Source of the DNA: Mustelus asterias
Lineage: Eukaryota
Direction: 5' to 3'
Length of the DNA: 64,000 bases
Assembly (NCBI RefSeq): GCF_964213995.1
Contig: NC_135825.1
Coordinates: forward strand, 12,028,001 to 12,092,000
The translations under genes were made by a program, and so were the position numbers. This document shows positions 4,947 through 53,311 of the stretch, in pieces; the stretch's first letter is position 1, and each line of letters starts with the position of its first letter. The notes below the pieces were generated by a model. It had not been told where the DNA came from and searched no databases. It worked only from the letters and a program-made list of their open reading frames with translations.

Positions 4947-4959
4947 GTGGGTATCTGCA

Positions 4960-5583: not shown

Positions 5584-5907
5584 AACCCGTGTCTGTTCCT
5601 GAACTTAAATTTCTATCACCACCAAATGCCTCATGTTCTGGGGGCTCAGTGTCCGTCTCCTGTGAGTCTGTCCAGGGATCACTTCCCATTCAGTACACAT
5701 GGTATGAAAAGACCCCGCCTGAAGATTCAAAGATCTCTGACACCAATAAACTGGATCTACATTGTCAATCCTTCAAACAGCAACATCATCAATATTACTG
5801 CACAGCCTCAAATAACCAGGGAGAAAAATCCAGTGAAATGGTTACGGTGTCAGTGATCCACATTTCAGAGAATGATTGCAGTTACTTAACACAAATCAGC
5901 AACCTTG
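5584..5907 (+). CDS. Ig C2/I-type exon C1
   Basis: cccacag|AACCCGTG...AACCTTG|gtaaat; 324 nt, phase 1/1; Ig motifs VSC, YTWY, YYC. Confidence 0.9.
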
Positions 5908-6332
5908 GTAAATATCACTTTCAGCTTCAAAAATTACAACTAATTTTAAAATTAATGTCTGTCTGAATTGCTCACGGGTTTATTTCTATTAGTCGAAGCA
6001 ATTTTAATAAAAATAGAATTGCATTTTATTTCGCTTTTCACAACTTCAGGACAGTTTTAAAGTCCGTTCTGGTCAATGCTGGAACTGATTCAGAGCCATT
6101 GTTGTGATGTAGGAAGCTCAGCACCAATTTGTGAGCAATAAGCTCCTTCAAGGAGCAATGTGATGATGAGCAGACAATCTGCTGTCTGACAATTGCTGTT
6201 TGAGAATACAATAACTCCAGGAGCCGGCTGTGAAGGAACCGTGCTTCTATTGTACAAAATGAAAATAATGAATTACCACACGTCTGTGGTGAGCACGACA
6301 GGTCCCAACCTGGACTAAAAGATTAATGGAAC

Positions 6333-6610
6333 TGATGCGTGATTAATTCACTCGGGAGGCTGGATTGTACCCGGGAAATAAAGGCTTTTATTAGCAACAA
6401 GAATAGAGCATACTTCTTAACAATACAATCCCAGACTAAAGGGTCACTAGGAAGTGCAGTGACCTTTATACTCCTATAGGAAGGCGGAGCCAACCGGAGT
6501 GTACCACAGAACAATACCAACAGTTGGAACACCCCAACCCTAACCCCAACAGTAACAAGAGTAACATATGTACAAATACCCATAGTGGTAACCATCTATG
6601 GTTCACCACA
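6333..6610 (-). repeat. Gypsy 3' LTR
   Basis: TGATGCG...CACCACA; direct repeat of 10710-11018; PPT (- strand AGGAGGGGTGAA) at 6611-6622. Confidence 0.9.
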
Positions 6611-6674
6611 TTCACCCCTCCTTTAAAAACAAAGGCCGGTGGGGCAAACAAAACAGTACGAACTGTCCATATAT

Positions 6675-9600
6675 TCACAAGTTCAGTCGTATCGGAGGTC
6701 CACACCGTCTCTGCGACCTCCGCAGCACTGGCGGTAGCGCCGGTTCTGGTGACCGTGGTGAGCCTCTCTCCAAGGTGGTGTCCAGTGACTCCTCCAGTTC
6801 CTCACGGACGGGTGGACCTCGAGGTGGCGAAAATCTCCTGGACTCAGGCAAGCCTCGAGGTGGCGATAACCTCCTCGACTCAGGCAATCTGTACACGGGA
6901 GTAAGAGGATTAAGTGGAGGTCCCGATACTGCCCGCGCCGTGTAAGGAGGGGAGAGAATGGGCAAAGGAACCCTAACCAGGTGTGCGGGAGCGACGGGGG
7001 TTTCCAGGTCCCCTGCGGGTGCCAGATCTCGGATAGAGACCGTGTCCTCTCGCCCATCAGGATATACTACATAGGCATATTGAGGGTTGGCGTGGAGGAG
7101 ATGGACCTGTTCAACCAAAGGGTCGGACGTGCGAGTCCTAACATGCCGCCGCAGGAGGACAGGTCCTGAGTACGTCAACCAAGACGGCAGTGAGGTCCCA
7201 GAGGAAGACTTCCTAGGGGAGGTAAACATCCGCTCATGTGGGGTAGGGTTGGTTGCCGGACACAGGAGGGACCGGATTGAATGGAGCGCATCAGAACGTA
7301 TCTCTTGCCAACGGGAGACTGGAAGACCCTTAGACCTCAACGCCAGTAAGACAGCCTTCCAGACTGTAGCGTTTTCTCTTTCGACCTGCCCGTTACCCCT
7401 GGGGTTGTAACTCGTAGTCCTACTTGAGGCAATTCCTTTAGAGAGCAGGTATTGCCTCAAGTCGTCGCTCATAAACGCCGAACCCCTATCACTGTCGATA
7501 TAACTGGGGTAGCCGAACAGGGTAAAAAGACTCCGCAGGGCTTTGATGACCTTGGCAGCGGACATGTCAGAACAGGGAATGGCAAAAGGGAATCGGGAGT
7601 ACTCATCAACCACGTTGAGGAAATACACATTCCGATCTGTGGAAGGAAGGGGGCCCTTGAAATCAACACTCAGTCATTCAAAAGGGCGAGTGGCCTTAAT
7701 GAGGTGTGCCTTGTCAGGTCGGTAGAAGTGCGGCTTGCATTCAGGACATACCTGGCAGCTTCGAGTTATCGACCTGACATCCTCTTTGGAGTAGGGCAGA
7801 TTCTGGGCCTTTACAAAATGGAAGAGCCGAGTGATCCCCGGATGGCAGAGATCATTGTGGAGGGCCTGTAGCCAGTCCTCCTGCACACTGGCACATGTTC
7901 CACGCGACAGGGCATCTGAGGGCTCATTGAGCTTCCCCGGACGGTACATGATATCATAGTTGTAGGTGGAGAGTTCGATTCTCCACCTCAAGATTTTATC
8001 ATTTTTAATTTTTCCCCTGAACGTGTTGTTGAACATGAATGCCACGGACCGCTGGTCCGTGAGCAGGGTAAATCGTTTTCCCGCCAAATAATGGCGCCAA
8101 TGCCGTACAGCCTCCACAATGGCCTGGGCTTCTTTTTCCACAGAGGAGTGCCGAATTTCAGGGCCTTGGAGGGTGCGAGAGAAAAAGGCGACGGGCCTAC
8201 CCGCCTGGTTAAGTGTGGCGGCCAGGGCGAAATCAGATGCATCACTCTCCACCTGGAAGGGGATGGACTCATCGACAGCGTGCATCGTGGCTTTCGTGAT
8301 GTCAGCTTTTATCCCTTCAAAGGCTAAACGAGCTTCTGCTGCCAGGGGAAACGAAGTAGACTTAATGAGCGGACGGGCTTTGTCCGCATAATTGGGAACC
8401 CACTGTGCGTAATACGAGAAGAAGCATAAGCATCTTCTCAGTGCTTTGATGCTAGTGGGTAGGGGAAGTTCAAGGAGGGGATGCATACGATCTGGATCAG
8501 GGCCAATGACCCCGTTTTCCACCACGTATCTGAGGATTGCTAGGCGGTGCTTGCTGAATACACACTTCTCCCTGTTATAGGTCAGATTCAGGCGAGACGC
8601 AGTGCGTAAAAACTTCAGGAGTTGGCGTCGTGGTCCTGATGGTCATGGCCGCAGATAGTGATGTTGTCCAGGTACGGGAATGTAGCCCGTAGCCTGTTTT
8701 GGTCCACCATTCGGTCCATTTCACGCTGGAAGACCGAGACCCCATTAGTGACGCCAAAAGGGACCCTTAAGAAGTGGTAGAGATGGCCATCCGCCTCAAA
8801 GGCCGTGTATTTTCGGTCCTCTGGGCGAACGGGAGCTGGTGGTAGGCTGACTTCAAGTCGATGGTGGAGAACATCCGGTACTGCGCAATCTGGTTGACCA
8901 TGTCAGATATGCGCGGGAGAGGGTACGCGTCCAGCTGCGTGTACCTATGAATGGTCTGACTATAGTCTATGACCATCCGGGCCTTGTCTCCAGTCTTAAC
9001 CACCACGACTTGCGCTCTCCATGGGCTAGTGCTAGGTTGAATGATCCCTTCCCTGAGGAGCTGCTGAACCTCAGATCGAATAAAGATCTGATCCTCAGCG
9101 CTGTAACGCCTGCTCTTAGTTGCGATGGACTTGCAGCCTGGCACAAGATTTTCAAATAAAGAAGGCGGGGTGGGTTTAAGTGTCAAGAGACTGCACGTGG
9201 AGCGTGCTGGACAATTTGGAGGCTGCTGTTCTCCCACTGAAAGTGGAGGGAGTGGCCCATCGTACTGCAGGGTCACACTCCTCAGGTGGACCATAAAGTC
9301 TAGTCCCAGGAGTACCGGAGCGCAAAGGTGCGGTAACACGAGGAGCCTGAAGTTCTCATAAACTGTGCTCCGCACCGTTAGAGTTACCACGCAGCTCCCA
9401 AGAACGGTAACAGATCGGGACCTCGACGCCATAGAGATTGTCTGCCTGACAGTTTGTACTCGGAGAGCGCACCGTTTCACGGTATCCGGATGAATGAAAC
9501 TCTCCGTGCTCCCGCTGTCAAACAGACAATGTATCAGGCGTCCGTTTACCTCTATGTCCATCATGGACTTGTCGAGTCTGTAAGGCTTGGCCTGGTCCAG

Positions 9601-10669
9601 GATGATTGATGCCACTGTTGGATCCCGAGTGCAACTGCAGGCAGCTGAGATGATCGATGATGAGGACCCCTGCTGATCGTCTGTGGCCGGTGTCGACCAA
9701 AATGGCTGCGCCCATGGATCGCATGTGGTCGATGGCGTTGAAAGTGGTGGCACTCGCAGGTCGCACGTGTCTTGCGTCGTCGTCCTCAGGAATGGCGGCG
9801 CCCGTGAATCGCACGTGGTTGAAGACATCGACAAAGCCAGAGACGAGGAGACGGATCCTGGGGAGTCACACGCAGCACAGCTTGGCTTCGAAGGGGGCTT
9901 CGCTCAGCACACTTTAGCACAGTGCCCTTTCTTTCCACAAGCGGAGCAAAATACCATCCTGGCCGGACATCTCTGGCGAGGGTGCTTCGCCAATCCACAG
10001 AAATAGCACCGTGGGCCTCCTGGAGCTGCCGCAGCCGTCAGGTCCGAGGTTGAAAGCACGATCGCGCAGTTCCTAGGAGCCGCTGGGTAGAGTTGAGTCG
10101 GTGGCTGTACTTGCCACGATGTTCCCACATGGTCGGTGGGGTAAGTTTCAAGACTTCGGGAGGCCGTTTCCATCGCATCAGCCAATTCCGCTGTCTTAGC
10201 TAGGTCTAAGTTACCCTGCTCCAGCAGCCGCAGGCGAATATAGGATGAGCCGATTCCCGCCACGAACGCGTCTCGGATCAGATCGTTATTGTATTGTAGC
10301 CGACACTAGCTTGCAATTGCAGGCTCTGGCTAGCTGCTGAGGTTTGCGCAGGTACCGTCCCGCCGTTTTGCCGGGCTGCCGCCGTCGAGTGGCTAGTAGG
10401 TGACGAGCATGAATCTCGTTTGGCGGTTTATGGTACAGCTTCTTGAGTAATTCGATGGCCTCTTTGTAGTCTTTGGAATCGTGGATTGTTGCATACACAG
10501 TGTCGCTTACCCTTGCGTAGAGGACCCGCAATCTGTCGGCGTTGTTTTGGACTGCTGTTGAGGTGTCGATATCATCCTGGAAACACTTCAACCAATGGTC
10601 GAAAGTGTTAGACGCTCCAGCGGAACGCGGATCAAAGGTAAGCCGATCGGGTTTTAACATTTGCTCCAT
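6675..10669 (-). pseudogene. Gypsy gag-pol, disrupted
   Basis: ORF pieces 10286-10669 and 9904-10263 (gag, CYFCGLAKHPRQRC), 8767-9834 (PR, RT N-term), 7674-8525 (RT/RH), 6675-7628 (IN). Confidence 0.9.
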
Positions 10670-10709
10670 GGTTGTTTTTTCTCAAAACAAAAATTGTTGC
10701 TAATAAAAT

Positions 10710-11262: not shown

Positions 11263-11571
11263 CTCCAAGTGCATTGTGGGCAAACAATAATGTAATAGGA
11301 GTTTTGGGAAGATCGATCACTATAGATTGTCACTATGACAAATTGTCCCAGTCACATGTGAAATCTTGGAGTCGTCAGTGCTCTGTTTTGGTGAAATCAG
11401 ACGATCCAGATGGACGGCGAGGGAGAATGTCGATCACAGATAACAAGACACAAGGATTATTTGTTGTTACTATGGAGGATCTTCGCTCCGGAGATGCAGG
11501 ATGGTACAGCTGTGGAATTGATAAGCCCGGCTTCCTTTCAATATTTCCTGTAAAGCTACAAATATCTGACG
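11263..11571 (+). CDS. CD300/pIgR-like Ig V exon V1
   Basis: ttttcag|CTCCAAGT...TCTGACG|gtacat; 309 nt, phase 1/1; SITIDCHY...KSW...GRMSITD...DAGWYSCG. Confidence 0.9.
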
Positions 11572-12856: not shown

Positions 12857-13180
12857 AACCCGTGTCTGTTCCTGAACTTAAATTTCTATCACCACCAAAT
12901 GCTTCATGTTCTGGGGGCTCAGTGTCCGTCTCCTGTGAGTCTGTCCAGGGATCACTTCCCATTCGGTACACATGGTATGAAAAGACCCCGTCTGAAGATT
13001 CAAAGATCTCTGACACCAATAAACTGGATCTACATTGTCAATCCTTCAAACAGCAACATCATCAATATTACTGCACAGCCTCAAATCACCAGGGAGAAAA
13101 ATCCAGTGAAATGGTTACAGTGTCAGTGATCCACATTTCAGAGAATGATTGCAGTTATTTAACACAAATCAGCAACCTTG
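12857..13180 (+). CDS. Ig C2/I-type exon C2
   Basis: Open frame, intact splice sites, copy of C1. Confidence 0.88.
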
Positions 13181-13848: not shown

Positions 13849-14157
13849 CTGCAAGTGCATTGTGGGCAAAAGATAATGTAACAGGAGTTTTGGGAAGATC
13901 GATCACTATAGATTGTCACTATGACAAATTGTCTCAGTCACATGTGAAATCTTGGAGTCGTCAGTGCTCTGTTTTGGTGAAATCAGACGATCCAGATGGA
14001 CGGCGAGGGAGAATGTCGATCACAGATAACAAGACACAAGGATTATTTGTTGTTACTATGGAGGATCTTCGCTCAGGAGATGCAGGATGGTACAGCTGTG
14101 GAATTGATAAGCCCGACTTCCTTTCAATATTTCCTGTAAAGCTACAAATATCTGACG
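13849..14157 (+). CDS. Ig V exon V2
   Basis: Open frame, intact splice sites. Confidence 0.88.
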
Positions 14158-15434: not shown

Positions 15435-15758
15435 AACCCGTGTCTGTTCCTGAACTTAAATTTCTATCACCACCAAATGCCTCATGTTCTGGGGGCTCAG
15501 TGTCCGTCTCCTGTGAGTCTGTCCAGGGACCAGGTCCCATTCAGTACACATGGTATGAAAAGACCCCGTCTGAAGATTCAAAGATCTCTGACACCAATAA
15601 ACTGGATCCACATTGTCAATCCTTCACACAGCAACATCATCAATATTACTGCACAGCCTCAAATCACCAGGGAGAAAAATCCAGTGAAATGGTTACAGTG
15701 TCAGTGATCCACATTTCAGAGAATGATTGCAGTTACTTAACACAAATCAGCAACATTG
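15435..15758 (+). CDS. Ig C2/I-type exon C3 (private substitutions SL>PG, L>P)
   Basis: Open frame, intact splice sites. Confidence 0.75.
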
Positions 15759-16423: not shown

Positions 16424-16732
16424 CTCCAAGTGCATTGTGGGCAAAAAATGATGTAACAGGAGTTTTGGGAAGGTCGATCACTATAGATTGTCACTATGAC
16501 AAATTGTCCCAGTCACATGTGAAATCTTGGAGTCGTCAGTGCTCTGTTTTGGTAAAATCAGCCGATCCAGATGGACGGCGAGGGAGAATGTCGATCACAG
16601 ATAACAAGACACAAGGATTATTTGTTGTTACTATGGAGGATCTTCGCTCAGGAGATGCAGGATGATAGAGCTGTGGAATTGATAAGCCCGGCTTCCTTTC
16701 AATATTTCCTGTAAAGCTACAAATATCTGACG
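16424..16732 (+). pseudogene. Ig V exon V3 with two in-frame stops
   Basis: GGA TGG TAC AGC TGT in other copies reads GGA TGA TAG AGC TGT here (16663-16668); splice sites still intact. Confidence 0.9.
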
Positions 16733-18006: not shown

Positions 18007-18330
18007 AACCCGTGTCTGTTCCTGAACTTAAATTTCTATCACCACCAAATGCCACATGTTCTGGGGGCTCAGTGTCCGTCTCCTGTGAGTCTGTCCAGGG
18101 ATCACTTCCCATTCAATACACATGGTATGAAAAGACCCCGTCTGAAGATTCAAAGATCTCTGACACCAATAAACTGGATCTACATTGTCAATCCTTCACA
18201 CAGCAACATCATCAATATTACTGCACAGCCTCAAATCACCAGGGAGAAAAATCCAGTGAAATGGTTACAGTGTCAGCGATCCACATTTCAGAGAATGATT
18301 GCAGTTACTTAACACAAATCAGCAACATTG
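18007..18330 (+). CDS. Ig C2/I-type exon C4
   Basis: Open frame, intact splice sites. Confidence 0.85.
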
Positions 18331-18998: not shown

Positions 18999-19307
18999 CT
19001 CCAAGTGCATTGTGGGCAAACAATAATGTAATAGGAGTTTTGGGAAGATCGATCACTATAGATTGTCACTATGACAAATTGTCCCAGTCACATGTGAAAT
19101 CTTGGAGTCGTCAGTGCTCTGTTTTGGTAAAATCAGCCGATCCAGATGGACGGCGAGGGAGAATGTCGATCACAGATAACAAGACACAAGGATTATTTGT
19201 TGTTACTATGGAAGATCTTCGCTCAGGAGATGCAGGATGGTACAGCTGTGGAATTGATAAGCCCGGCTTCCTTTCAATATTTCCTGTAAAGCTACAAATA
19301 TCTGACG
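18999..19307 (+). CDS. Ig V exon V4
   Basis: Open frame, intact splice sites. Confidence 0.85.
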
Positions 19308-20251: not shown

Positions 20252-20596
20252 TGTGGGGCGGCACGGTAGCACAGTGGATAGCACTGCTGCTTCACAGCTC
20301 CGGGGACCTGGGTTCGATTCCCGGCTTGTGTCACTGTCTGTGTGGAGTTTGCACATTCTCCTCTTGTCTGCGTGGGTTTCCTCCGGGTGCTCCGGTTTCC
20401 TCCAACAGTCCAAAGATGTGCGGGTTAGGTTGATTGTCCATGCTAAAATTGCCCCTTACTTTCCTGAGATGCGTAGGTTAGAGGGATTAGCAGGTAAAAG
20501 TGTAGGGATATAGGAGTACGGCCTGGGTGGGATTGTGGTTGGTGCAAACTTGATGGGCCGAATGGCCTGTTTCTGCATTGTAGGGTTTCTATTTCT
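20252..20596 (+). mobile_element. HE1-type tRNA SINE inserted in intron V4-C5
   Basis: GGGCGGCACGGTAGCACAGTGG...GGTTCGATTCCC; absent from the same site in all other units. Confidence 0.85.
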
Positions 20597-20941: not shown

Positions 20942-21265
20942 AACCCGTGTCTGTTCCTGAACTTAAATTTCTATCACCACCAAATGCCTCATGTTCTGGG
21001 GGCTCAATGTCTGTCTCCTGTGAGTCTGATCAGGGATCACTTCCCATTCAGTACACATGGTATGAAAAGGCCCCGTCTGAAGATTCAAAGATCTCTGACA
21101 CCAATAAACTGGATCTACATTGTCAATCCTTCAAACAGCAACATCATCAATATTACTGCACAGCCTCAAATAACCAGGGAGAAAAACCCAGTGAAATGGT
21201 TACAGTGTCAGTGATCCACATTTCAGAGAATGATTGCAGTTACTTAACACAAATCAGCAACCTTG
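20942..21265 (+). CDS. Ig C2/I-type exon C5
   Basis: Open frame, intact splice sites. Confidence 0.85.
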
Positions 21266-21914: not shown

Positions 21915-22223
21915 CTCCAAGTGCCTTGTGGGCAAAAAATAATGTAACAGGAGTTTTGGGAAGATCGATCACTATAGATTGTCACTATGACAAATTGTCC
22001 CAGTCACATGTGAAATCTTGGAGTCGTCAGTGCTCTGTTTTGGTAAAATCAGACGATCCAGATGGACGGCGAGGGAGAATGTCGATCACAGATAACAAGA
22101 CACAAGGATTATTTGTTGTTACTATGGAGGATCTTCGTTCGGGAGATGCAGGATGGTACAGCTGTGGAGTTGATAAGCCCGGCTTCCTTTCAATATTTCC
22201 TGTAAAGCTACAAATATCTGACG
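21915..22223 (+). CDS. Ig V exon V5
   Basis: Open frame, intact splice sites. Confidence 0.85.
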
Positions 22224-23472: not shown

Positions 23473-23796
23473 AACCTGTGTCAGTTCCTGAACTTAAATT
23501 TCTATCACCACCAAATGCCTCATGTTCTGGGGGCTCCGTGTCCGTCTCCTGTGAGTCTGTCCAGGGATCACTTCCCATTCAGTACACATGGTATGAAAAG
23601 ACCCCGTCTGAAGATTCAAAGATCTCTGACACCAATAAACTGGATCTACATTGTCAAGCCTTCAAACAGCAACATCATCAATATTACTGCACAGCCTCAA
23701 ATCACCAGGGAGAAAAATCCAGTGAAATGGTTCCAGTGTCGGTGATCCACATTTCAGAGAATGCTTGCAGTTATGTGACACAAATCAGCAACATTG
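23473..23796 (+). CDS. Ig C2/I-type exon C6
   Basis: Open frame, intact splice sites. Confidence 0.85.
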
Positions 23797-30998: not shown

Positions 30999-31307
30999 CT
31001 CCAAGTGCATTGTGGGCAAAAAATAATGTAATAGGAGTTTTGGGAAGATCGATCACTATAGATTGTCAGTATGACAAATTGTCCCAGTCACATGTGAAAT
31101 CTTGGAGTCGTCAGTGCTCTGTTTTGGTAAAATCAGACGATCCAGATGGACGGCGAGGGAGAATGTCGATCACAGATAACAAGACACAAGGATTATTTGT
31201 TGTTACGATGGAGAATCTTCACTCAGGAGATGCAGGATGGTACAGCTGTGGTATTGATAAGCCCGGCTTCCTTTCAATGTTTCCTGTAAAGCTCCAAATA
31301 TCTGACG
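30999..31307 (+). CDS. Ig V exon V6
   Basis: Open frame, intact splice sites. Confidence 0.85.
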
Positions 31308-32595: not shown

Positions 32596-32919
32596 AACCC
32601 GTGTCTGTTCCTGAACTTAAATTTCTATCACTGCCAAATGCCTCATGTTCTGGGGGCTCAGTGTCCCTCACCTGTGAGTCTGTCCAGGGATCACTTCCCA
32701 TTCAGTACACATGGTATGAAAAGACCCCGTCTGAAGATTCAAAGATCTCTGGCACCAATAAACTGGATCTACATTGTCAATCATTCAGACAGCAACATCA
32801 TCAATATTACTGCACAGCCTCAAATAAACAGGGAGAAAAATCCAGTGAAATGGTTACAGGGTCAGTGATCCACATTTCAGAGAATGATTGCAGTTATGTG
32901 ACTCAAATCAGCAACATTG
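32596..32919 (+). CDS. Ig C2/I-type exon C7
   Basis: Open frame, intact splice sites. Confidence 0.85.
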
Positions 32920-33588: not shown

Positions 33589-33897
33589 CTCCAAGTGCCT
33601 TGTGGGCAAAAAATAAAGTAACAGGAGTTTTGGGAAGATCGATCACTATAGATTGTTACTATGACAAATTGTCCCAGTCACATGTGAAATATTGGAGTCG
33701 TCAGTGCTCTGTTTTAGTAAAATCAGACGATCCAGATGGACGGCGAGGGAGAATGTCGATCACAGATAACAAGACACAAAGATCATTTGTTGTTACGATT
33801 GAGGATCTTCGCTCAGGAGATGCAGGATGGTACAGCTGTGGTATTGATAAGCTCGGCTTCCTTTCAATATTTCCTGTAAAGCTCCAAATATCTGACG
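33589..33897 (+). CDS. Ig V exon V7
   Basis: Open frame, intact splice sites. Confidence 0.85.
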
Positions 33898-35176: not shown

Positions 35177-35500
35177 AACCCGTTTCTGTTCCTGAACTTA
35201 AATTTCTCTCACCACCAAATGCCTCATGTTCTGGGGGCTCAGTGTCTGTCTCCTGTGAGTCTGTCCAGGGATCACTTCCCATTCAGTACACATGGTATGA
35301 AAAGACCCCGTCTGAAGATTCAAAGATCTCTGGCACCAATAAACTGGATCTACATTGTCAATCCTTCAAACAGCAACATCATCAATATTACTGCACAGCC
35401 TCAAATAACCAGGGAGAAAAATCCAGTGAAATGGTTACAGTGTCAGTGATCCACATTTCAGAGAATGATTGCAGTTACTTAACACAAATCAGCAACATTG
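35177..35500 (+). CDS. Ig C2/I-type exon C8
   Basis: Open frame, intact splice sites. Confidence 0.85.
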
Positions 35501-36167: not shown

Positions 36168-36476
36168 CTCCAAGTGCCTTGTGGGCAAAAAATGATGTAA
36201 CAGGAGTTTTGGGAAGGTCGATCACTATAGATTGTCACTATGACAAATTGTCCCAGTCACATGTGAAATCTTGGAGTCGTCAGTGCTCTGTTTTGGTAAA
36301 ATCAGATGATCCAGATGGACGGCGAGGGAGAATGTCGATCACAGATAACAAGACACAAAGGTCATTTGTTGTTACGATTGCGGATCTTCGTTCAGGAGAT
36401 GCAGGATGGTACAGCTGTGGTATTCATAAGCACGACGTCCTTTCAATATTTCCTGTAAAGCTACAAATATCTGACG
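36168..36476 (+). CDS. Ig V exon V8
   Basis: Open frame, intact splice sites; divergent FG loop IHKHDVL. Confidence 0.85.
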
Positions 36477-36741: not shown

Positions 36742-37829
36742 AGGGGCTGTTGCCTTGTGGATCCAGAACTGGCTTGCCTGCAGAAGGCAGAGAGTGGCTG
36801 TGGAGGGGTCTTTCTCTGCATGGAGGTCAGTGACCAGTGGAGTGCCCCAGGGATCTGTTCTGGGACCCTTGCTGTTTGTCATTTTCATAAATGACCTGGA
36901 TGAGGAAGTGGAGGGATGGGTTGGTAAGTTTGCTGACGACACCAAGGTAGGTGGTGTTGTTGATAGTTTGGAGGGATGTCAGAAGTTGCAGCGAGACATA
37001 GATAGAATGCAAGACTGGGCGGAGAAGTGGCAGATGGACTTCAACCCGGATAAGTGTGTGGTGATCCATTTTGGCAGATCCAATGGGATGAAGCAGCAGT
37101 ATAATATGAAGGGTACCATTCTTAGCAGTGTAGAGGATCAGAAGGACCTTGGGGTCCGGGTCCATAGGACTCTTAAATCGGCCTCGCAGGTGGAGGATGC
37201 GGTCAAGAAGGCGTACGGCGTACTGGCCTTCATTAATCGAGGGATTGAGTTTAGGAGTCGGGAGATAATGCTGCAGCTTTATAGGACCCTGGTTAGACCC
37301 CACTTGGAGTACTGCGCGCAGTTCTGGTCACCTCATTACAGGAAAGATGTTGAAGCCATTGAAAGGGTGCAGAGGAGATTTACAAGGATGTTGCCTGGAT
37401 TGGGGGGCATGCCTTATGAGGATAGGTTGAGGGAGCTTGGTCTCTTCTCCCTGGAGAGACGAAGGATGAGAGGTGACCTGATAGAGGTTTACAAGATGTT
37501 GAGAGGTCTGGATAGGGTAGACTCTCAGAGGCTATTTCCAAGGGCTGAAATTGTTGCTACGAGAGGACACAGGTTTAAGGTGCTGGGGGGTAGATACAGA
37601 GGAGATGTCAGGGGTAAGTTTTTCACTCAGAGGGTGGTGGGTGAGTGGAATCGGCTGACGTCAGTGGTGGTGGAGGCAAACTCGTTGGGGTCTTTTAAGA
37701 GACTTCTGGATGAGTACATGGGATTTAATGGGATTGAGGGCTATAGATAGGCCTAGAGGTGGGGATGTGATCGGCGCAACTTGTGGGCCGAAGGGCCTGT
37801 TTGTGCTGTGGCTTTCTATGTTCTATGTT
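36742..37829 (+). mobile_element. CR1 family A, 5'-truncated, in intron V8-C9
   Basis: Open RT C-terminal frame 36755-37750, (TTCTATG)n tail, TSD CATCCA (36736-36741 / 37830-37835). Confidence 0.9.
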
Positions 37830-38855: not shown

Positions 38856-39179
38856 AACCTGTGTCTGTTCCTGAACTTAGATTTCTATCACCACCAAATG
38901 CCTCATGTTCTGGGGGCTCAGTGTCCGTCTCCTGTGAGTCTGTCCAGGGATCACTTCCCATTCAGTACACATGGTACGAAAATACCACATCTGAAGATTC
39001 AAAGATCTCTGACACCAATAAACTGGATCTACATTGTCAATCCTTCAAACAGCAACATCATCAATATTACTGCACAGCCTCAAATAACCAGGGAGAAAAA
39101 TCCAGTGAAATGGTTACAGTGTCAGTGATCCACATTTCAGAGAATGATTGCAGTTACTTAACACAAATCAGCAACCTTG
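38856..39179 (+). CDS. Ig C2/I-type exon C9
   Basis: Open frame, intact splice sites. Confidence 0.85.
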
Positions 39180-39845: not shown

Positions 39846-40154
39846 CTCCAAGGGCCTTGTGGGCCAAAAATAATGTAACCGGAGTTTTGGGAAGATCGAT
39901 CACTATAGATTGTCACTATGACAAATTGTCCCAGTCACATGTGAAATATTGGAGTCGTCAGTGCTCTGTTTTGGTAAAATCAGACGATCCAGATGGACAG
40001 CGAGGAAGAATGTCGATCACAGATCACAAGACACAAGGATTATTTGTTGTCACTATGGAGGATCTTCGCTCAGGAGATGAAGGATGGTACAGCTGTGGTA
40101 TTGATAAGCCCGGCTTCCTTTCAATATTTCCTGTAAAGCTCCAAATATCTGACG
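39846..40154 (+). CDS. Ig V exon V9
   Basis: Open frame, intact splice sites. Confidence 0.85.
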
Positions 40155-41440: not shown

Positions 41441-41764
41441 AACCCGTGTCTGTTCCTGAACTTAAATTTCTATCACTGCCAAATGCCTCATGTTCTGGGG
41501 GCTCAGTGTCCCTCACCTGTGAGTCTGTCCAGGGATCACTTCCCATTCAGTACACATGGTATGAAAAGACCCCGTCTGAAGATTCAAAGATCTCTGGCAC
41601 CAATAAACTGGATCTACATTGTCAATCATTCAGACAGCAACATCATCAATATTACTGCACAGCCTCAAATAAACAGGGAGAAAAATCCAGTGAAATGGTT
41701 ACAGGGTCAGTGATCCACATTTCAGAGAATGATTGCAGTTATGTGACTCAAATCAGCAACATTG
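41441..41764 (+). CDS. Ig C2/I-type exon C10
   Basis: Open frame; translated ORF identical to C7. Confidence 0.85.
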
Positions 41765-42433: not shown

Positions 42434-42742
42434 CTCCAAGTGCATTGTGGGCAAAAAATAATGTAACAGGAGTTTTGGGAAGATCGATCACTATAGATTG
42501 TTACTATGACAAATTGTCCCAGTCACATGTGAAATCTTGGAGTCGTCAGTGCTCTGTTTTGGTAAAATCAGACGATCCAGATGGACGGCGAGGGAGAATG
42601 TCGATCACAGATAACAAGACACAAAGATCATTTGTTGTTACGATTGAGGATCTTCGCTCAGGAGATGCAGGATGGTACAGCTGTGGTATTGATAAGCCCG
42701 GCTTCCTTTCAATATTTCCTGTAAAGCTACAAATATCTGACG
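42434..42742 (+). CDS. Ig V exon V10
   Basis: Open frame, intact splice sites. Confidence 0.85.
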
Positions 42743-44036: not shown

Positions 44037-44360
44037 AACCCGTGTCTGTTCCTGAACTTAGATTTCTATCACCACCAAATGCCTCATATTCTGGGGGCTC
44101 AGTGTCCGTCTCCTGTGAGTCTGTCCAGGGATCACTTCCCATTCAGTACACATGGTATGAAAAGGCCCCGTCCGAAGATTCAAAGATCTCTGACACCAAT
44201 AAACTGGATCTACATTGTCAATCCTTCAAACAGCAACATCATCAATATTACTGCACAGCCTCAAATAACCAGGGAGAAAAATCCAGTGAAATGTTTAACA
44301 TTTCAGTGATCAACGGATTAGGGGAGAATTGCAGTTATGTGACACAGATCAACAACGTTG
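44037..44360 (+). CDS. Terminal (membrane-proximal) Ig C2/I-type exon C11
   Basis: Open frame, distinct 3' end (FNISVINGLGENC), consensus donor GTAAGT, unique downstream intron. Confidence 0.9.
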
Positions 44361-45034: not shown

Positions 45035-45360
45035 CATAGAATCCATAGAATCTTACAGTGCAGAAGGAGACCATTTGACGCATCGAGTCTCCGCCAACGT
45101 CAATCCCACCCAGGCCTTATCCCCATAATCCCATGCATTTACCCCAGCTAGTTCCCCCTGACACTGAGGGGCAATTTAGCTTGGCGAATCCACCTAATCC
45201 GCACATCTTTGGACTGTGGGAGGAAACCAGAGTGCCCGGAGGAAACACACGCAGACAAGGGGAGAATGTGCAAACTCCACACAGCCAGTCACCCGAGGCC
45301 AGATTTGAACCCGGGTCTCTGTGAGGCAGCAGTGCTAACCACTGTGTCACCATGCTGCCC
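45035..45360 (-). mobile_element. HE1-type SINE
   Basis: Reverse complement begins GGGCAGCATGGTGACACAGTGGTTAGCACTGC; CATAGAA-type tail. Confidence 0.8.
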
Positions 45361-46715: not shown

Positions 46716-46794
46716 TCGGACCTGAAAATTCTTGTGAAGTTTTAACGGTATCGTCAATGCATTCGTCAATTCCAAACTCCAAACCTGCTGAAAG
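46716..46794 (+). CDS. Stalk exon ((V)GPENSCEVLTVSSMHSSIPNSKPAE(S))
   Basis: Pyrimidine tract ttccttctttcag| and donor AG|gtacgc; phase 1 in, phase 2 out, exactly bridging C11 and the TM exon; Ser/Pro-rich. Confidence 0.75.
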
Positions 46795-48249
46795 GTACGC
46801 TGTTTTTATTGTTAGTGTTTAAATGACATGGCTTCTGTGTGAGTGATTAAATCCTCTTTAACAACTTTGGCGTGAGGATGGATGTCATTTATTGTCCTGG
46901 GCCAGTCACAGAGCAGCAATCATTGTTGGATTGCCACTCCGCTTGAAGCTTTCCACCCTCGACTCAGCTCCACATTTCTTGCCTGATCTTCCAAGTCCAG
47001 ATTCTCCAGAACTGTGGAGCGCAGCGTCCCTCGGAGAACTCCATCGGAACTCTGTAGGACCACAGGTGGGTCGGGTGAACGATGGATCGGGAGACAGGTG
47101 TATCGATGTGTTGGTAGCAGGAGGCAATGGTGGTAGGTGGGTGAGAAGACAGTTGTGGGAGGTCATAGGTGTGTGAGATGGGTAGGGTTGCAGATAGGTG
47201 AGGTGGTAGATGTGGAGGGTGGCAGTTGGGTGTGGTAGGAGGTTGATGAGGTGGTAGATGAATAGGATGGTAATCGGGTCAGATTGGCAGGGGTAGCCTG
47301 GTTTGGGGGCTAATCTGATTTGGACCTTGGGTAAGCTAGTGGTGGGTGCAAAGAGTAGTCTGTGAGAGTAATCGGATTGGCTCAGGTTGTGGCGTCGTCA
47401 CAAGGTCAGATGGGATAGTCGGGGTGTGGGGTGATAGTTGGTATGTCAGGGGGTTCATCAGAGGATTGGGGGGACTCCAGGGGGTCAGTGTGATTATTCG
47501 GGGGTCAGTTCTGTGATTACCCAGGAATTAAACTTGATTCTTTCAGTCTAACATTTCCTGGGTAACTATCCAGTTAAGCCCCATGGAATTGTTTGAAGTG
47601 TCTGACTCTTACCCAGAGCTGAAGATTTTCACAGAGGGACTCAGGGTACAGCAGAATTGTCCGTTGGAAGTTCCAATGTCCCAGGCAATTCCCATGGAGG
47701 TCATCATGTTGCGTCATCTGCAGGGTCCTGACACACATCTTGGGTCATATGTCCAGTCTCTGACGATCCGGGAGACTGGGCATCATTTTTCAATCGCTCT
47801 CAGATCAGAAACCTTGGCGGGATGTTGTTGTGTTCGCTTCATAATGAAGGTGCGAGTTTTAAAAAGGGTTGATTTGATGTGATGTCATTAGGGTGCGTGC
47901 TCAGGCTGCTGTGTTAACGCGGAGGTTACAATGGTGATGAGGAAAAAATACCAACTAAACATCAAAATGATGAAAAAGCTGCTGGAAATACGCAGCAGGT
48001 CACTTCTTATCTACAGAGAAAGCAGACAAGGAAATCTCTGAAGAAATGGCCAATATTGATCTGGTCAAAGTTCACTGCTGTTTCTGAGATTTTGCTGTGT
48101 GCAAATTGGCTTCCACATCTCCCATATCACAACAGTGGTGATTGTCTAAAAATACTTCCCAGATTGTAAAATTCTTTAGACCATCCAAAGGTCATGAAAA
48201 GTGCTGTATAATTTCAAAACCCACTTCCTTGAACAAATGGCCAAGAATC

Positions 48250-49220: not shown

Positions 49221-49263
49221 TGTAAAGTCCAACACTGCTCATTTCCTATTCTCTGTGTCACAG

Positions 49264-49352
49264 TCTGATTTACATTGTGCTCGGGGTGCTGGGGGCCATT
49301 CTTGTGGTGTTCGCTGTTTCTCTACTTTTGTACCGGAGGCGAATCGGCAAGG
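49264..49352 (+). CDS. Transmembrane exon (LIYIVLGVLGAILVVFAVSLLLY-RRRIGK)
   Basis: cacag| acceptor and G|gtgagt donor; phase 2 in, phase 1 out; ~23 hydrophobic residues with no charge, followed by a basic stop-transfer. Confidence 0.88.
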
Positions 49353-50617: not shown

Positions 50618-50922
50618 CCTGGTCGACTCAATCTTTCCTCATAACACAATTTCCCGTATCGGGAATTAACGCTGTGAACCGAGGGTGGGTATGTCCTACC
50701 TGGAGCCCAAAACCTACAAACGGCACTCCAGGTGTGGCCTCACCAATTCCCCATTTTATACACAAACCCCTCTGCAGCAAAAGATAACAACCCATTTGCC
50801 TTTCTTTCAATGCAAATCAATGTGGGGCCATGTACCCTGCAACACATGTTCAGTTCAGACATTCTAAGCATATCTCCCATACCGATTCAAGCCTTTTCAA
50901 TGTTAACATTTTCATTTTTCAG

Positions 50923-50975
50923 ATACAAATGACATAAGCCATGGAAGAGACAACAATAATCTTATTGACAATCAG
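50923..50975 (+). CDS. Cytoplasmic exon 1 (DTNDISHGRDNNNLIDNQ)
   Basis: ttcatttttcag| acceptor and CAG|gtgagg donor; phase 1 in, phase 0 out. Confidence 0.75.
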
Positions 50976-52489
50976 GTGAGGAGATGAAGTGTGAATTCTC
51001 TGACTAATGTCTGGAAATTTTCAAACCTGGATGATATCGAATTGACAGGACTGAAACAGGCCATTCAGGCCAACTGGTCCATGCTGGATTTGATGCTCAA
51101 CACAAGCCTCCTCCTGTCCCTCTTTATCTAACCAGACCAGCATCAGCTTCTGTTCCTTTCACTCACATTTGCTTCTGTAGATTTGCCTTAAATGTATTGA
51201 TGCTGTTTTACTGAACTGCATCTTGGATTGGCTCCAATCTTTAAGCTCATTGGATAGGCATAAAGGGAGATAGACCTTGGCTTTACCGTCAGAAATGAGA
51301 CCTCGTTAATTATTGCATCTCAACTTTGGATTTGATGACATTTTTCAGTTTACACTGTCATATATTCCTGTAAAGTCTCAGGTATTACTGCCAAAACAGA
51401 ACAAAACTTCAGAACAAGAAAATGCTATCAAACGCTAACGAGTCCATCTGTTGTGTGATGAGAGTTGGTTTGCTGTAACTTCGTCCATCGTGTCCCTCAG
51501 CTCTGGAATCCTCTCTGTCTAATTCATCACTTCATTATCCCTTTATGGCATTCCTTAAAATGTCTGCCTTAAGCCTTTGATAGATTTTGTTCACCTTCAC
51601 TAATATCTCCTTCCTTGGTTTAGTTTCTGTCTTGGGGCATTTTACTATGTTGAAGGCTCCAAATAAATGTACTTCTTTGTGTTAAATATGGATGTAGCTA
51701 ATTCTAATTTAGGATCGCTGCTGGTTCTACTGTGAGATAGGAATATGAAAGATGCTATCATTCTGAAGGGATTAGCATCATTGAATGCAGTAGTGTCCGC
51801 TGTGAATTAATTACAAGTTTACCGGGAAACTGCTGTGAAGATGTTTCAGTGCAGCTCCCACACTTACAGATGGACAGCACACACAAGCTGCCCAAGAGAC
51901 AGAGGGGGAGAACTCTGATAATCACAAGCCATAGCAAGCAGGTGTGGATGTTTGGTTGGTGTAACCATGTAGGCAAACCTCGTTAGTAATTAATCATTAT
52001 AATTAGACAAGCATATAGAGGCTATAACTGGTTAACGATATTCAACTAACATAAATGAAGTTATCAAAACTATTCGCTGTAATTGGATATCAATGAGTTC
52101 TGAACAAATGTTGACTTGTGATTGGTGTATGAGAATTATATGTAAGATACACAAAGATAGAATGGTGCATGCCATGTACCAGTACGCCACCTTGTGGGAG
52201 GCAGACTTCCTCGCTAAAGGGTGAATAAAGGCCGACTTAAAACCCCAAAATCTTCATCTGGTCTGTCGAGGGTGCGAAGTATAATTTCGCTAGATGGCAG
52301 CAAAATGCCAAATCACATTCTGCCTTGGAAAATAAAAAACTTAAGGCGAGATTCAGCATGCTGGGCCTCTCTTTGATGAACGATCTGTTTGAGATCTTCA
52401 AGATTTAGGTAGAGATAACAAAGATGTTTCCACTTGCAGGCAAGACCAAAACCAGTGGCCATAAATAGTGGATAGTCATTAATAACAGG

Positions 52490-52830
52490 TAGTGGTGTCG
52501 TGGTATTGTCACTGGGCTCGTAATCCAGAGACCCAGGATCATCCTCTGGGGATCTGGGTCCAAATCCCACCAAAGCAGAACTCAATAAAAATCTGGAATT
52601 AAAAGTCTAATGATAATCGTGAAACTATTGTAGATTGTTGTAAAAACCTATTTGGTTCACTAATGTCCTTGCGGGACATTTCCCTTAGGAAATCCGCTGC
52701 CCATACCTGGCCTGGCCTACATGTGACTCATAAATGCTCCGTGAAATGGCCGAGCAAGCCATTCAGTTCAATTAGAGATGGGCAACAACTGTTGGCCAAC
52801 CAGTGACGCCCACATCCCATGTGTGAATCA
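52490..52830 (+). mobile_element. tRNA-derived SINE (same family as 4570-4946), degraded
   Basis: GTGGTATTGTCACTGG...GGTCCAAATCCCACC...AAACTATTGTAGATTGTTGTAAAAACC; ends approximate. Confidence 0.5.
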
Positions 52831-53176
52831 AAAAGGTTAATCTAACAGCAAATTCAAGAGAAACATCTTTACCCAGAGTGTTCAGAATGTGGAATTTTCC
52901 ACCACAGGGAACAGTTGAGGTAAAGAGCTGAAACACATTCAAACAGAAGCTGGATAAGCACATGGGAAGGAAAGGATTTGAATGTTATTTTGATGAGATT
53001 AACTGGACAGGTTTATGTGGAGTTGGGACAAATGATGTGTTTCACCGCTGGAGATAGATTATCTCATGTTGTGATCACTTGTAAACTGATTTGCAATGAT
53101 CTAGAAATCGATTTCTCCACAAATCACCATTCAAGTTATGTGGAAATAAATTGGATCGTTATTTTTTATATTGCAG

Positions 53177-53311
53177 CAATTGGCAGTTGTAGGAGAGAGC
53201 ATTGTGTATGCCAGTGTAAAGCACAATCGAGGGAACTCAGCAGAAACACACAGCGAGCAAACTGTCCGGTTCATTAACAATGAGGATGGAGTCACATATG
53301 CAACACTGTAG
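53177..53311 (+). CDS. Terminal cytoplasmic exon with two ITIMs (IVYASV, VTYATL)
   Basis: tttatattgcag|CAA, phase 0; QLAVVGESIVYASVKHNRGNSAETHSEQTVRFINNEDGVTYATL*; possible ATTAAA at 53515-53520. Confidence 0.82.
   Translation, partial: QLAVVGESIVYASVKHNRGNSAETHSEQTVRFINNEDGVTYATL

What the first reader, a model, noticed from the sequence alone, without database searches (positions are those of the whole stretch)
5584..53311. Giant shark CD300/pIgR-like inhibitory receptor with at least 21 alternating V/C2 Ig domains
Seen in sequence: 11 C2/I-type and 10 V-type exons alternate strictly and all have phase-1 junctions. They splice in frame to a stalk, an uncharged TM and a tail with two ITIMs, giving about 2330 aa within the window. 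Known: CD300/CMRF35-like receptors have one V domain and pIgRs have a few V-only domains, so a long (V-C2)n chain in this family is unusual. Inference: this is a very long, highly multivalent inhibitory receptor with 10 or more near-identical ligand-binding V domains. It could act as an avidity sensor for polymeric ligands such as IgM, lipid surfaces or pathogens, or as a pathogen decoy.
Basis: partly seen in the sequence, partly recalled or inferred. Interest (0 to 1): 0.9.

Follow-up and report, generated by a model that had tools for sequence, protein, structure and literature searches.

The report
Giant shark inhibitory immune receptor gene
A shark gene of the little-studied MDIR family of inhibitory immune receptors has multiplied a two-exon antibody-like module ten times, which predicts an unusually long surface protein, but one module is broken and no RNA evidence could be had.

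Summary
The exon array is real. Eleven 324-nt C2-type and ten 309-nt V-type Ig exons alternate strictly on the + strand. All 21 have AG/GT borders and phase-1 junctions. Two RefSeq models from Mustelus asterias reproduce this chain.

Correction: V exon 3 (16424-16732) carries two adjacent in-frame stops, so the roughly 2,335 codons are not one open frame.

The V domain is CD300/pIgR-like by sequence and by fold. The C2 domain is FCRL5-like. The gene belongs to the MDIR family first described in skate, where V-C2 alternation is the rule. Uncharacterised RefSeq models with 12 (Mustelus) and 19 detected Ig domains (Amblyraja) already exist.

Exons are half as divergent as introns and omega is about 0.4-0.5, so the cassettes have been coding. 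No RNA run was available. Expression, ligand and function remain inference.

This is a new variant of a known kind, of moderate interest. The scan's own earlier notes report a similar array just upstream in this genome.

The parts
5584..5907 (+). A1, C2-type (FCRL-like) Ig exon, 324 nt, phase 1-1. It is the first exon of the array.
   Evidence: The upstream flank is unlike the array introns.
11263..11571 (+). B1, V-type (pIgR/CD300-like) Ig exon, 309 nt, phase 1-1
12857..13180 (+). A2 exon
13849..14157 (+). B2 exon
15435..15758 (+). A3 exon, open, with 4 private amino-acid changes (two of them to proline) and 0 private synonymous changes
16424..16732 (+). B3 exon, broken: TGA TAG at 16663-16668 replaces the Trp-Tyr codons before the F-strand Cys
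   Evidence: The listed contigs stop at 16664, so reads did not check the stops.
18007..18330 (+). A4 exon
18999..19307 (+). B4 exon
20942..21265 (+). A5 exon
21915..22223 (+). B5 exon (donor GTAAAT; the other nine B donors are GTACAT)
23473..23796 (+). A6 exon
30999..31307 (+). B6 exon (its upstream intron is enlarged by LINE insertions)
32596..32919 (+). A7 exon (translation identical to A10)
33589..33897 (+). B7 exon
35177..35500 (+). A8 exon
36168..36476 (+). B8 exon
38856..39179 (+). A9 exon
39846..40154 (+). B9 exon
41441..41764 (+). A10 exon
42434..42742 (+). B10 exon
44037..44360 (+). A11, the terminal-type C2 exon. Its 3' third differs from A1-A10 and its donor is GTAAGT.
   Evidence: It is 95% identical to the last C2 of XP_078098058.1.
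46716..46794 (+). Stalk exon, 79 nt, phase 1 in and phase 2 out
   Evidence: Found by splice and phase enumeration. It is 25 of 25 residues identical to P0291 and 88% identical to P0213.
49264..49352 (+). Transmembrane exon, 89 nt, phase 2 in and phase 1 out. It has an uncharged hydrophobic span followed by RRR.
   Evidence: It is 96.6% identical to P0213 and P0291.
50923..50975 (+). Small cytoplasmic exon, 53 nt, phase 1 in and phase 0 out
   Evidence: It is 100% identical to P0213.
53177..53311 (+). Tail exon with two ITIM-consensus motifs (tyrosines 30 residues apart) and a TAG stop at 53309-53311
   Evidence: P0213 and P0291 end at the same residue.

Best explanation
The region 5584-53311 is the body and 3' end of one gene of the elasmobranch MDIR family (modular domain immune-type receptors). 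Its ancestral layout is leader, first V domain, internal C2, second V type (V2), terminal C2, stalk, TM and ITIM tail. In this gene the internal two-exon cassette (C2 plus V2, about 2.58 kb with its introns) has been amplified to ten tandem copies, most likely by unequal crossing-over between the two homologous C2 exons.

All Ig exons are symmetric phase-1 exons, so any number of them keeps the frame. The predicted product is a type I membrane protein. It would have a first V domain encoded upstream of the window, then (C2-V2) x 10, a terminal C2, a short stalk, an uncharged TM and a tail with two ITIMs.

Shown here: the exon anatomy, the domain families, the similarity to named MDIRs, purifying selection on the cassette exons, and the same exon chain in RefSeq models of a related shark.

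Inferred: the tail recruits SH2 phosphatases (SHP-1/2 type) and signals inhibition when the many V2 domains bind a repetitive or clustered ligand. Cassette 3 is decayed (two stops in V3, proline changes in C3). It must therefore be skipped, or this allele gives a truncated or NMD-targeted message.
For: Anatomy:
- 11 A and 10 B exons alternate, and 21 of 21 have AG/GT borders and phase 1-1 junctions.
- The array starts at A1 and ends at A11. Neither the 2 kb upstream of A1 nor the stretch from A11 to the stalk exon resembles the array introns; only a short interspersed repeat matches.

Domain families:
- B matches Pfam V-set at 40.4 bits against a cut-off of 26. Its PDB hits are pIgR, CLM-1/CD300f and CD300a.
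- A has its best PDB hit in FCRL5 at 5.1e-40 summed over the repeats, with the best single domain at 2.1e-06.

Family:
- A search with the canonical relative P0057 returns proteins that UniRef/GenBank name MDIR3, MDIR5 and MDIR2 of Rostroraja eglanteria, at E 3.7e-185, 1.1e-148 and 5.0e-101.
- Window A2 is 73.5% identical to the last C2 of MDIR3, B1 is 48-53% identical to its V domains, and the TM is 59% identical to MDIR2.

Exon chain:
- XP_078098058.1 (P0291, 1400 aa, Mustelus asterias) reads leader-V, then (C2-V2) x 5, C2, stalk, TM, cyt and tail.
- Its Ig domains other than the first V are 92-97% identical to window exons. Its stalk is 100% identical, the TM 96.6%, cyt1 94% and the tail 88.6%.
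- XP_078098060.1 ('titin-like', leader-V then (C2-V2) x 5 then C2) and the next accession XP_078098061.1 (partial: V2, C2, stalk, TM, cyt, tail) look like the two halves of a second such gene.

Selection:
- Mean pairwise difference is 0.040 (A) and 0.042 (B) against 0.077 in 1,939 intron columns.
- Among distinct variants there are 23 synonymous and 43 non-synonymous in A (omega 0.52, p 0.011). In B there are 18 and 27, plus the 2 stops (omega 0.43, p 0.006).
- Private changes in the nine cassettes other than number 3 are 29 non-synonymous to 22 synonymous (omega 0.37, p 6e-4).

Not an assembly duplication: whole units are 91.0-96.3% identical to each other and none is near-perfect.

Fold: in the model of P0213 the V2 blocks have pLDDT of about 82-96, the C2 blocks mostly 85-93, and a TM helix spans 240-273. 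V2 matches CD300lf with TM 0.85.

Tail: there are two ITIM-consensus motifs and no charged residue in the TM.
Against: - B3 has two in-frame stops, so the full chain cannot be translated as assembled.
- The splice sites of cassette 3 look like those of the other cassettes, so nothing in the sequence predicts that it is skipped.
- No RNA run holds the locus. The supporting RefSeq proteins are computed models, and I could not see what evidence lies behind them.
- The leader and first V exon lie outside the window.
- Nine of ten B donors are GTACAT, which is far from the donor consensus.
- The ligand and the signalling are pure inference.
Confidence: 0.8

Rival explanations
1. Null allele or young pseudogene. 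The gene as assembled is not functional. V3 is included, the message ends at the TGA TAG, and it is degraded or gives a short secreted fragment. The array is a relic that is starting to decay.
For: - There are two adjacent stops in B3.
- A3 has 4 private non-synonymous changes and 0 private synonymous changes.
- Cassette 3 has intact AG/GT sites like the others, so inclusion is the default expectation.
Against: - The damage is confined to one cassette: 6 non-synonymous or stop changes to 0 synonymous there, against 29 to 22 in the other nine (Fisher p 0.045).
- Even the private, most recent changes in the other nine cassettes show omega 0.37 (p 6e-4). That is not expected if the whole gene had long been dead.
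- The stalk, TM, cytoplasmic and tail exons are open and 88-100% identical to the Mustelus models.
Confidence: 0.25
2. Isoform repertoire. The symmetric cassettes are used variably, so the gene makes a family of receptors of different length and V2 content rather than one 22-domain protein.
For: - All 21 Ig exons are phase 1-1 and of fixed length, so any subset keeps the frame.
- The B donors are weak (GTACAT in 9 of 10).
- Seven of the 27 distinct amino-acid variants of V2 fall in the 9 positions 85-93, the CDR3-like stretch (p 0.008). Placing the loops by the pIgR D1 alignment is my own approximation.
Against: - There are no RNA data at all.
- Enrichment over all three loop-like stretches together is weak (11 of 27 variants in 28 of 102 positions, p 0.09).
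- The RefSeq models use the cassettes consecutively.
Confidence: 0.3
3. Assembly artefact. The ten cassettes are an over-expansion or mis-join of fewer real copies.
For: - Tandem arrays of 2.6-kb units at 91-96% identity are hard to assemble.
- The contigs I could lay are short and cannot span a unit.
Against: - No two units are near-identical; the range is 91.0-96.3%.
- Three different retroelement insertions mark individual introns.
- An 80-nt contig made only of 31-mers unique to unit 3 is present without mismatch in X1 and X2. These may come from the same sample as the assembly.
- An independent assembly of another species carries arrays of at least five such cassettes in two genes.
Confidence: 0.03
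4. It is a true CD300 or pIgR orthologue, rather than an MDIR.
For: - The V exon's best solved relatives are pIgR and CD300 family chains.
- NCBI's pipeline names many relatives 'polymeric immunoglobulin receptor-like' or 'CMRF35-like'.
Against: - The architecture fails both definitions. It is not a single V, as in CD300, and not V-only, as in pIgR. Half of the domains are FCRL-like C2.
- 0 of 10 V exons keep the Cys of the YWCR motif that marks CD300 (motif quoted in PMC3031540).
- Named MDIR proteins are far closer: 73.5% identity for C2 and 48-53% for V, against 33-37% identity to CD300f.
Confidence: 0.03

Closest known systems
MDIR2/3/5, modular domain immune-type receptors of the clearnose skate (ABC86796.1, ABC86797.1, ABC86800.1; Cannon et al. 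2006, Immunogenetics 58:362). I saw only the reference entry and passages of PMC3031540. The paper itself is not held.
   Same: - The two domain types are the same: a CD300/pIgR-like V alternating with an FcR-like C2.
- The stalk, TM and multi-ITIM tail layout is the same (MDIR2 and MDIR3 sequences read).
- Identity is 73.5% for C2, 48-53% for V and 59% for the TM.
   Different: - The three named skate proteins I could read have 2 to 5 Ig domains, and the window has 21 Ig exons.
- The amplified V2 type lacks the first Cys of the extra C-C' pair.
- The tail is cut to two ITIMs.
Mustelus asterias RefSeq models XP_078098058.1 (LOC144511706, 1400 aa), and XP_078098060.1 ('titin-like') with XP_078098061.1 (partial)
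   Same: - The exon chain and cassette types are the same, and the Ig domains other than the first V are 92-97% identical.
- The stalk is 100% identical and the tail ends at the same residue.
   Different: - They are computed and uncharacterised models.
- One has five cassettes and the other is split into two models with at least six between them, against ten cassettes here.
- No stop is reported in them.
CD300 / CMRF35-like molecules (e.g. CD300f/CLM-1, PDB 5ffl, 2nms)
   Same: - The V fold is the same (TM 0.84-0.87, rmsd 2.0-2.4 A, 33-37% identity), and sequence E is 3.5e-13.
- Inhibitory members also carry ITIMs.
   Different: - CD300 has a single V with the YWCR motif and two disulfides (PMC3031540, Introduction passage).
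- Here there are ten V exons, each without that Cys, interleaved with C2 domains.
Polymeric immunoglobulin receptor
   Same: A chain of CD300-like V domains. The window V matches all five pIgR domains.
   Different: - pIgR has V domains only, with no FCRL-like C2 domain between them.
- Its tail carries transcytosis signals rather than ITIMs (recalled).
- No binding to polymeric Ig was tested here.
FCRL5 (PDB 9loc)
   Same: - The C2 exon resembles six of its Ig domains (i-Evalues 2.1e-06 to 0.3).
- It is a long Ig chain on an ITIM-bearing tail (the tail is recalled).
   Different: I recall FCRL ectodomains as having no V domain and nine Ig domains at most.
Other long predicted chains: Amblyraja radiata XP_032898777.1 (2193 aa, 19 detected V/C2 domains, TM, ITIM-like tail) and stickleback LOC120820825 (2141 aa, 19 V-only domains)
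   Same: These are very long chains of the same V type on a TM and an ITIM-like tail.
   Different: - The skate domains are mixed types (median identity 0.59-0.71), not one near-identical cassette.
- The stickleback chain has no C2.
- Both are unverified models.

Membership tests
MDIR (modular domain immune-type receptors) | Ectodomain built from CD300/pIgR/TREM-like V domains combined with FcR-like Ig domains | tested here: met
   The B exon is V-set and pIgR/CD300-like. The A exon is FCRL5-like. The family description comes from a passage of PMC3031540.
MDIR (modular domain immune-type receptors) | Clear sequence similarity to the named skate MDIR proteins over whole domains | tested here: met
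   MDIR3, MDIR5 and MDIR2 are among the hits of the canonical relative P0057. For window exons, A2 is 73.5% identical (E 2e-62) and B1 48-53% (E about 1e-30 to 1e-32) to MDIR3. The TM is 59% identical to MDIR2.
MDIR (modular domain immune-type receptors) | Inhibitory members carry cytoplasmic ITIM(s) and an uncharged TM | tested here: met
   There are two ITIM-consensus motifs and no charged residue in the TM. That MDIR2 and MDIR3 are the ITIM forms is recalled from the 2006 abstract. Their tails, as read, do hold such motifs.
MDIR (modular domain immune-type receptors) | Member of a clustered multigene family | tested here: inconclusive
   Only the leader exon of a next family gene lies in the window (58705-58741). 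The Mustelus relatives share one 58.7-Mb record.
MDIR (modular domain immune-type receptors) | One to six Ig domains (recalled from the 2006 abstract, which I did not see) | tested here: not met
   The window has 21 Ig exons. Of 114 held family proteins with both domain types, 113 have 2-6 domains and one has 11. A later search found models with 12 to 19 domains.
CD300 / CMRF35-like | Single V-type Ig domain | tested here: not met
   Ten V exons are interleaved with eleven C2 exons.
CD300 / CMRF35-like | YWCR motif and two disulfide bonds in the V domain (PMC3031540) | tested here: not met
   0 of 10 V exons have the Cys; they read W-S-R there.
CD300 / CMRF35-like | CD300-type V fold | tested here: met
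   Foldseek gives TM 0.85 and rmsd 2.0 A to mouse CD300lf for the model of P0213, whose V is 97% identical to B1.
Polymeric Ig receptor | Ectodomain of V-type domains only | tested here: not met
   Every second domain is C2-type.
Polymeric Ig receptor | Binds J-chain-containing polymeric Ig and transcytoses | not testable with these tools
The tail carries ITIMs.
FCRL | FCRL-type C2 Ig domains | tested here: met
   FCRL5 chain 9loc_A scores E 5.1e-40 with eight stretches.
FCRL | Ectodomain without V-set domains (recalled) | tested here: not met
   Ten V-set exons are present.

The most novel reading that the evidence does not exclude
A protein of 20-22 Ig domains (about 2,100-2,300 aa) is really made. 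From the usual ~4 nm per Ig domain, which I recall, it would be on the order of 80 nm if extended. That would be the longest inhibitory Ig receptor known. Cassette number (five in one Mustelus paralogue, ten here) would act as an evolvable dial for reach and avidity. The conserved orphan Cys of the V2 type would bond to an orphan Cys of the neighbouring C2, stiffening the chain into a rod that presents ten near-identical binding sites to repetitive ligands.
Probability: 0.3. Interest if true: 0.65.

Novelty: new variant of a known kind. Interest (0 to 1): 0.45.

Why it matters
MDIRs are among the oldest known paired-type Ig receptors of jawed vertebrates, and as far as I could find they have no known ligand. 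This locus shows a simple genomic route, tandem amplification of a symmetric two-exon cassette, by which such a receptor can multiply its binding domains within a short evolutionary time. It also shows that the amplified exons stayed under purifying selection.

If the long form is expressed, it raises a testable question for receptor biophysics. How does an ITIM receptor many times taller than a cell-cell contact signal? What ligand rewards ten-fold valency?

It also has a practical side for annotation. RefSeq currently labels pieces of this gene type 'titin-like', 'Fc receptor-like 5' or 'pIgR-like'.

Tried and rejected
- A motif search for the stalk (a Tyr-x-Cys-Glu type pattern and S/T/P-rich windows) found nothing. 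I replaced it with an enumeration of AG...GT intervals in the right phases, which gave the stalk and the small cytoplasmic exon. Homology then confirmed both.
- RNA evidence: the one run search returned four runs, none on record as RNA.
- Read laying on unit 3 at 98% likeness: the contigs cover most of the unit. The listed contigs end at 16664 and resume at 16694. No 'other letter' row touches 16665 or 16668, so the two stops are neither confirmed nor contradicted. The tool warns that contig depth is no copy number, so I draw none from it.
- The 2006 MDIR paper and a 2010 review are not held. What I say about MDIR1-5 beyond the passages of PMC3031540 is recalled. Supplements were not opened.
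- Not in print, as far as these searches go: searches found no paper on MDIR-type receptors with more than six domains or on this shark gene. Only PMC3031540 mentions MDIRs.
- A self-BLAST of the long models gave no off-diagonal hits, which was a method failure. Domain-wise global alignments replaced it.
- My regular expression for the W-C motif misfired, so the tallies printed at the end are invalid. I use only the printed segments, read by eye.
- I first took internal 'SGALW'-type starts of V domains as a sign that long models are fused tandem genes. I dropped this because the skate MDIR3 sequence has them too.
- I considered and rejected an assembly artefact and a true CD300 or pIgR orthologue (see the rival explanations).
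- I did not use the third homologous-protein search. The second one was capped at 2,195 aa, so longer relatives would not have been seen.


Full report
**What is in the sequence**

The window has no gaps. A direct-repeat scan finds ten copies of a unit. Start-to-start spacings are 2575-2590 nt, except for three longer ones of 2916, 3678 and 9084 nt.

I translated one ORF of each of the two recurring kinds and ran tblastn against the window. This gives 11 'A' and 10 'B' matches, strictly alternating on the + strand, with E from 1e-53 to 1e-83.

Reading the flanks and extracting the exons gives the following:
- All 21 of 21 have an AG acceptor after a pyrimidine tract and a GT donor.
- Every A exon is 324 nt and every B exon is 309 nt.
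- Every junction splits a codon after its first base (phase 1).
- The split codons read Ala at A-to-B junctions and Glu at B-to-A junctions, as in the related proteins.

**The correction**

B3 (16424-16732) reads TGA TAG where the other nine B exons read TGG TAC. This is the Trp-Tyr just before the F-strand cysteine. Its partner A3 carries 4 private amino-acid changes, two of them to proline, and no private synonymous change.

The 21 Ig exons hold 2,218 codons, and the four downstream exons add about 118.

**The 3' end**

A scan for hydrophobic spans and ITIM patterns located the TM and tail. The TM exon can only be read through a phase-2 acceptor, and the tail's best acceptor is phase 0. So the chain cannot be 'all phase 1'.

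Enumerating AG...GT intervals in the required phases gave two more exons:
- a 79-nt stalk exon, 46716-46794;
- a 53-nt cytoplasmic exon, 50923-50975.

The full chain runs:
- A11 (phase 1 out);
- stalk (phase 1 in, 2 out);
- TM 49264-49352 (phase 2 in, 1 out);
- cyt1 (phase 1 in, 0 out);
- tail 53177-53311.

The TM has no charged residue and is followed by RRR. The tail holds IVYASV and VTYATL, with the tyrosines 30 residues apart.

**Independent support for the chain**

A HMMER search of 1.84 billion representatives with one V exon found 1,541 proteins at E up to 0.001. The best hits are elasmobranch proteins that alternate the same two domains. Further searches and cluster look-ups gave three RefSeq models from Mustelus asterias on one 58.7-Mb record.
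- XP_078098058.1 (1400 aa) reads leader-V, then (C2-V2) x 5, C2, stalk, TM, cyt and tail. Its Ig domains other than the first V are 92-97% identical to window exons. Its stalk is 25 of 25 identical, the TM 96.6%, cyt1 94% and the tail 88.6%. It ends at the same residue.
- XP_078098060.1, named 'titin-like', reads leader-V, then (C2-V2) x 5, then C2, and then runs into non-homologous residues.
- XP_078098061.1, the next accession and marked partial, reads V2, terminal C2, stalk, TM, cyt and tail. It maps piece by piece onto the window exons.

These are computed models and I could not see their evidence. They do show that another assembly and another pipeline arrive at the same gene plan. 

**Limits of the array**

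The 2 kb upstream of A1 does not resemble the array introns, and neither does the stretch between A11 and the stalk exon. Only a short interspersed repeat matches. A11 shares its first two thirds with A1-A10 and differs in its last third (14 private changes). That last third is like the terminal C2 of the Mustelus models.

The simplest history is unequal crossing-over between the internal and terminal C2 exons of a gene laid out as first V, C2, V2, C2. This is inference.

The leader and first V exon must lie upstream of the window, as in the Mustelus models. With them the gene would encode 22 Ig domains. Earlier notes of this scan place an 'exon 2' with a LINE insertion about 2.6 kb upstream, and a second array 15-32 kb upstream. 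I could not check them.

**What the domains are**

- The B exon passes Pfam V-set (40.4 bits against a cut-off of 26).
- Its best solved relatives are pIgR (1.6e-30 summed over five domains), CLM-1/CD300f (3.5e-13) and CD300a (4.3e-11). NKp44, TIM-4 and TREM2 follow.
- AlphaFold2 was run on the Mustelus protein P0213 with 23 relatives. Its V is 97% identical to B1.
- The model gives pLDDT of about 82-96 for the V blocks and mostly 85-93 for the C2 blocks, a disordered stalk and tail, and a TM helix.
- Foldseek puts the V on mouse CD300lf with TM 0.85 and rmsd 2.0 A.
- The A exon sits just under the Pfam Ig_3 cut-off (29.9 against 30). Its best solved relative is FCRL5 (5.1e-40 summed, best single domain 2.1e-06), then CD22 d6-d7 and FCRL4.

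**Which family**

A search with the canonical two-domain relative P0057 (Heptranchias perlo) returns 124 proteins at E up to 1e-10. Among them are the proteins that GenBank and UniRef name modular domain immune-type receptor 3, 5 and 2 of the clearnose skate.

Window exons compared one by one give 73.5% identity (C2) and 48-53% (V) to MDIR3, and 59% (TM) to MDIR2. [quoted passage not shown] The original 2006 paper is not held.

The gene is an MDIR, not a CD300 or a pIgR. It fails the single-V rule, and 0 of 10 V exons keep the Cys of the YWCR motif that PMC3031540 gives as the CD300 hallmark.

**How unusual is the length?**

Among 114 held family proteins with both domain types, 113 have 2-6 domains and one has 11. 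A further search for longer proteins found:
- models with 12 domains in Mustelus;
- 18 and 19 detected domains in Amblyraja radiata, the 19-domain one with a TM and ITIM-like tail;
- a stickleback V-only chain of 19 domains.

That search could not see proteins above 2,195 aa. In the skate giants the domains are of mixed types (median identity 0.59-0.71). In the Mustelus models the median identities are 0.87-0.92. In the window the cassette copies have mean amino-acid identities of 0.91-0.92.

Twenty-one or 22 domains is thus at the top of what has been predicted, but it is not alone. My six literature searches found no paper describing any of it.

**Have the cassettes been coding?**

I aligned the ten units.
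- Exon columns differ on average by 0.040 (A) and 0.042 (B), and 1,939 intron columns by 0.077.
- Third codon positions (0.051 and 0.071) vary more than first and second positions.
- Counting each distinct variant once, A has 23 synonymous and 43 non-synonymous (omega 0.52, binomial p 0.011).
- B has 18 synonymous and 27 non-synonymous, plus the two stops (omega 0.43, p 0.006).
- Private changes in the nine cassettes other than number 3 are 29 non-synonymous to 22 synonymous (omega 0.37, p 6e-4). Cassette 3 has 6 to 0 (Fisher p 0.045).

Gene conversion blurs such counts. Taken at face value, the exons have been under purifying selection, also recently, and the decay is local to one cassette.

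**Is it an assembly artefact?**

- Whole units are 91.0-96.3% identical, and no pair is near-perfect.
- Three introns carry their own retroelement insertions.
- Contigs of four public runs (three samples, one study, kind unknown, possibly the assembly's own sample) lie on unit 3 at 98% likeness or more. They include an 80-nt contig made only of 31-mers unique to that unit.
- The listed contigs break at 16664, right before the first stop-making base, so the stops themselves remain unchecked.

**How it most likely works (inference)**

The product is a type I membrane glycoprotein with 27 N-x-S/T sequons in the Ig exons. It presents up to ten near-identical CD300-like V2 domains, spaced by C2 domains.

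When a repetitive or clustered ligand engages several V2 domains, the two tail tyrosines would be phosphorylated. Their spacing is typical of tandem-SH2 phosphatase binding (recalled). The tail would then recruit an SHP-type phosphatase and dampen activation.

CD300 relatives bind lipids and pIgR binds polymeric Ig (recalled). Either class of ligand is possible here, and none was testable.

**Verdict**

This is a new variant of a known kind, of moderate interest.

Noticed in passing
window 58705-58741 (+): An ATG followed by a 12-residue hydrophobic leader, very like the leaders of family proteins, ends in a phase-1 GTGAGT donor. It is probably the first exon of the next MDIR-type gene. No V exon follows within the window.
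   Followed up: partly
window 6675-10669 (-), in the intron between A1 and B1: An LTR-retrotransposon-like insertion with aspartyl protease, RT, RNase H and integrase ORFs (Pfam). It explains the 7.3-kb first unit. I only observed it.
   Followed up: partly
window 24134-27058 (-) and 27.4-30.4 kb, in the intron between A6 and B6; also 36755-37750 (+): A LINE with an uninterrupted 974-aa endonuclease plus reverse-transcriptase ORF lies antisense to the gene, next to further RT fragments. A third RT fragment sits in unit 8.
   Followed up: partly
window 7-933 and 1907-2482 (-): Retrovirus-like remnants at the window's start: an envelope TM-subunit-like ORF (HR1-HR2 / TLV_coat hits at borderline scores) and an integrase core. 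I only described them.
   Followed up: no
all ten B exons; relatives P0006, P0151, P0163, P0168, P0174, P0187, P0205: The amplified V2 type has lost the first Cys of the extra C-C' pair (W-S-R instead of W-C-R) but keeps the second. Read by eye, the same holds for internal V domains of Hemiscyllium, Chiloscyllium, Carcharodon, Cetorhinus and Rhincodon models. A cassette has 5 + 3 = 8 cysteines, so an inter-domain disulfide is possible.
   Followed up: partly
window 32596-32919 and 41441-41764: Exons A7 and A10 are 100% identical in nucleotides, while their whole units are only 94.7% identical. This points to a gene-conversion patch or strong constraint.
   Followed up: no
B exons, residues 85-93 of the translation: Seven of the 27 distinct amino-acid variants among the ten V2 copies fall in this CDR3-like stretch of 9 positions (p 0.008). 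The loop assignment is approximate.
   Followed up: partly
window 46976-47083 (+), intron between the stalk and TM exons: This stretch is 63% identical over 40 residues to the odd C-terminal end of the Mustelus model XP_078098046.1, which lacks a TM. It is either an alternative terminal exon for a secreted form or an annotation artefact.
   Followed up: no
window 53309-53374: Similarity to the longer tail of the Heptranchias relative P0057 continues past the TAG stop. The Mustelus models stop at the same residue, so the two-ITIM tail looks like a shared shortening in this shark lineage.
   Followed up: partly
window 4953-5118, 20256-20592, 45045-45360, 61499-61646: Copies of a short interspersed repeat, about 75% identical and in both orientations.
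   Followed up: no
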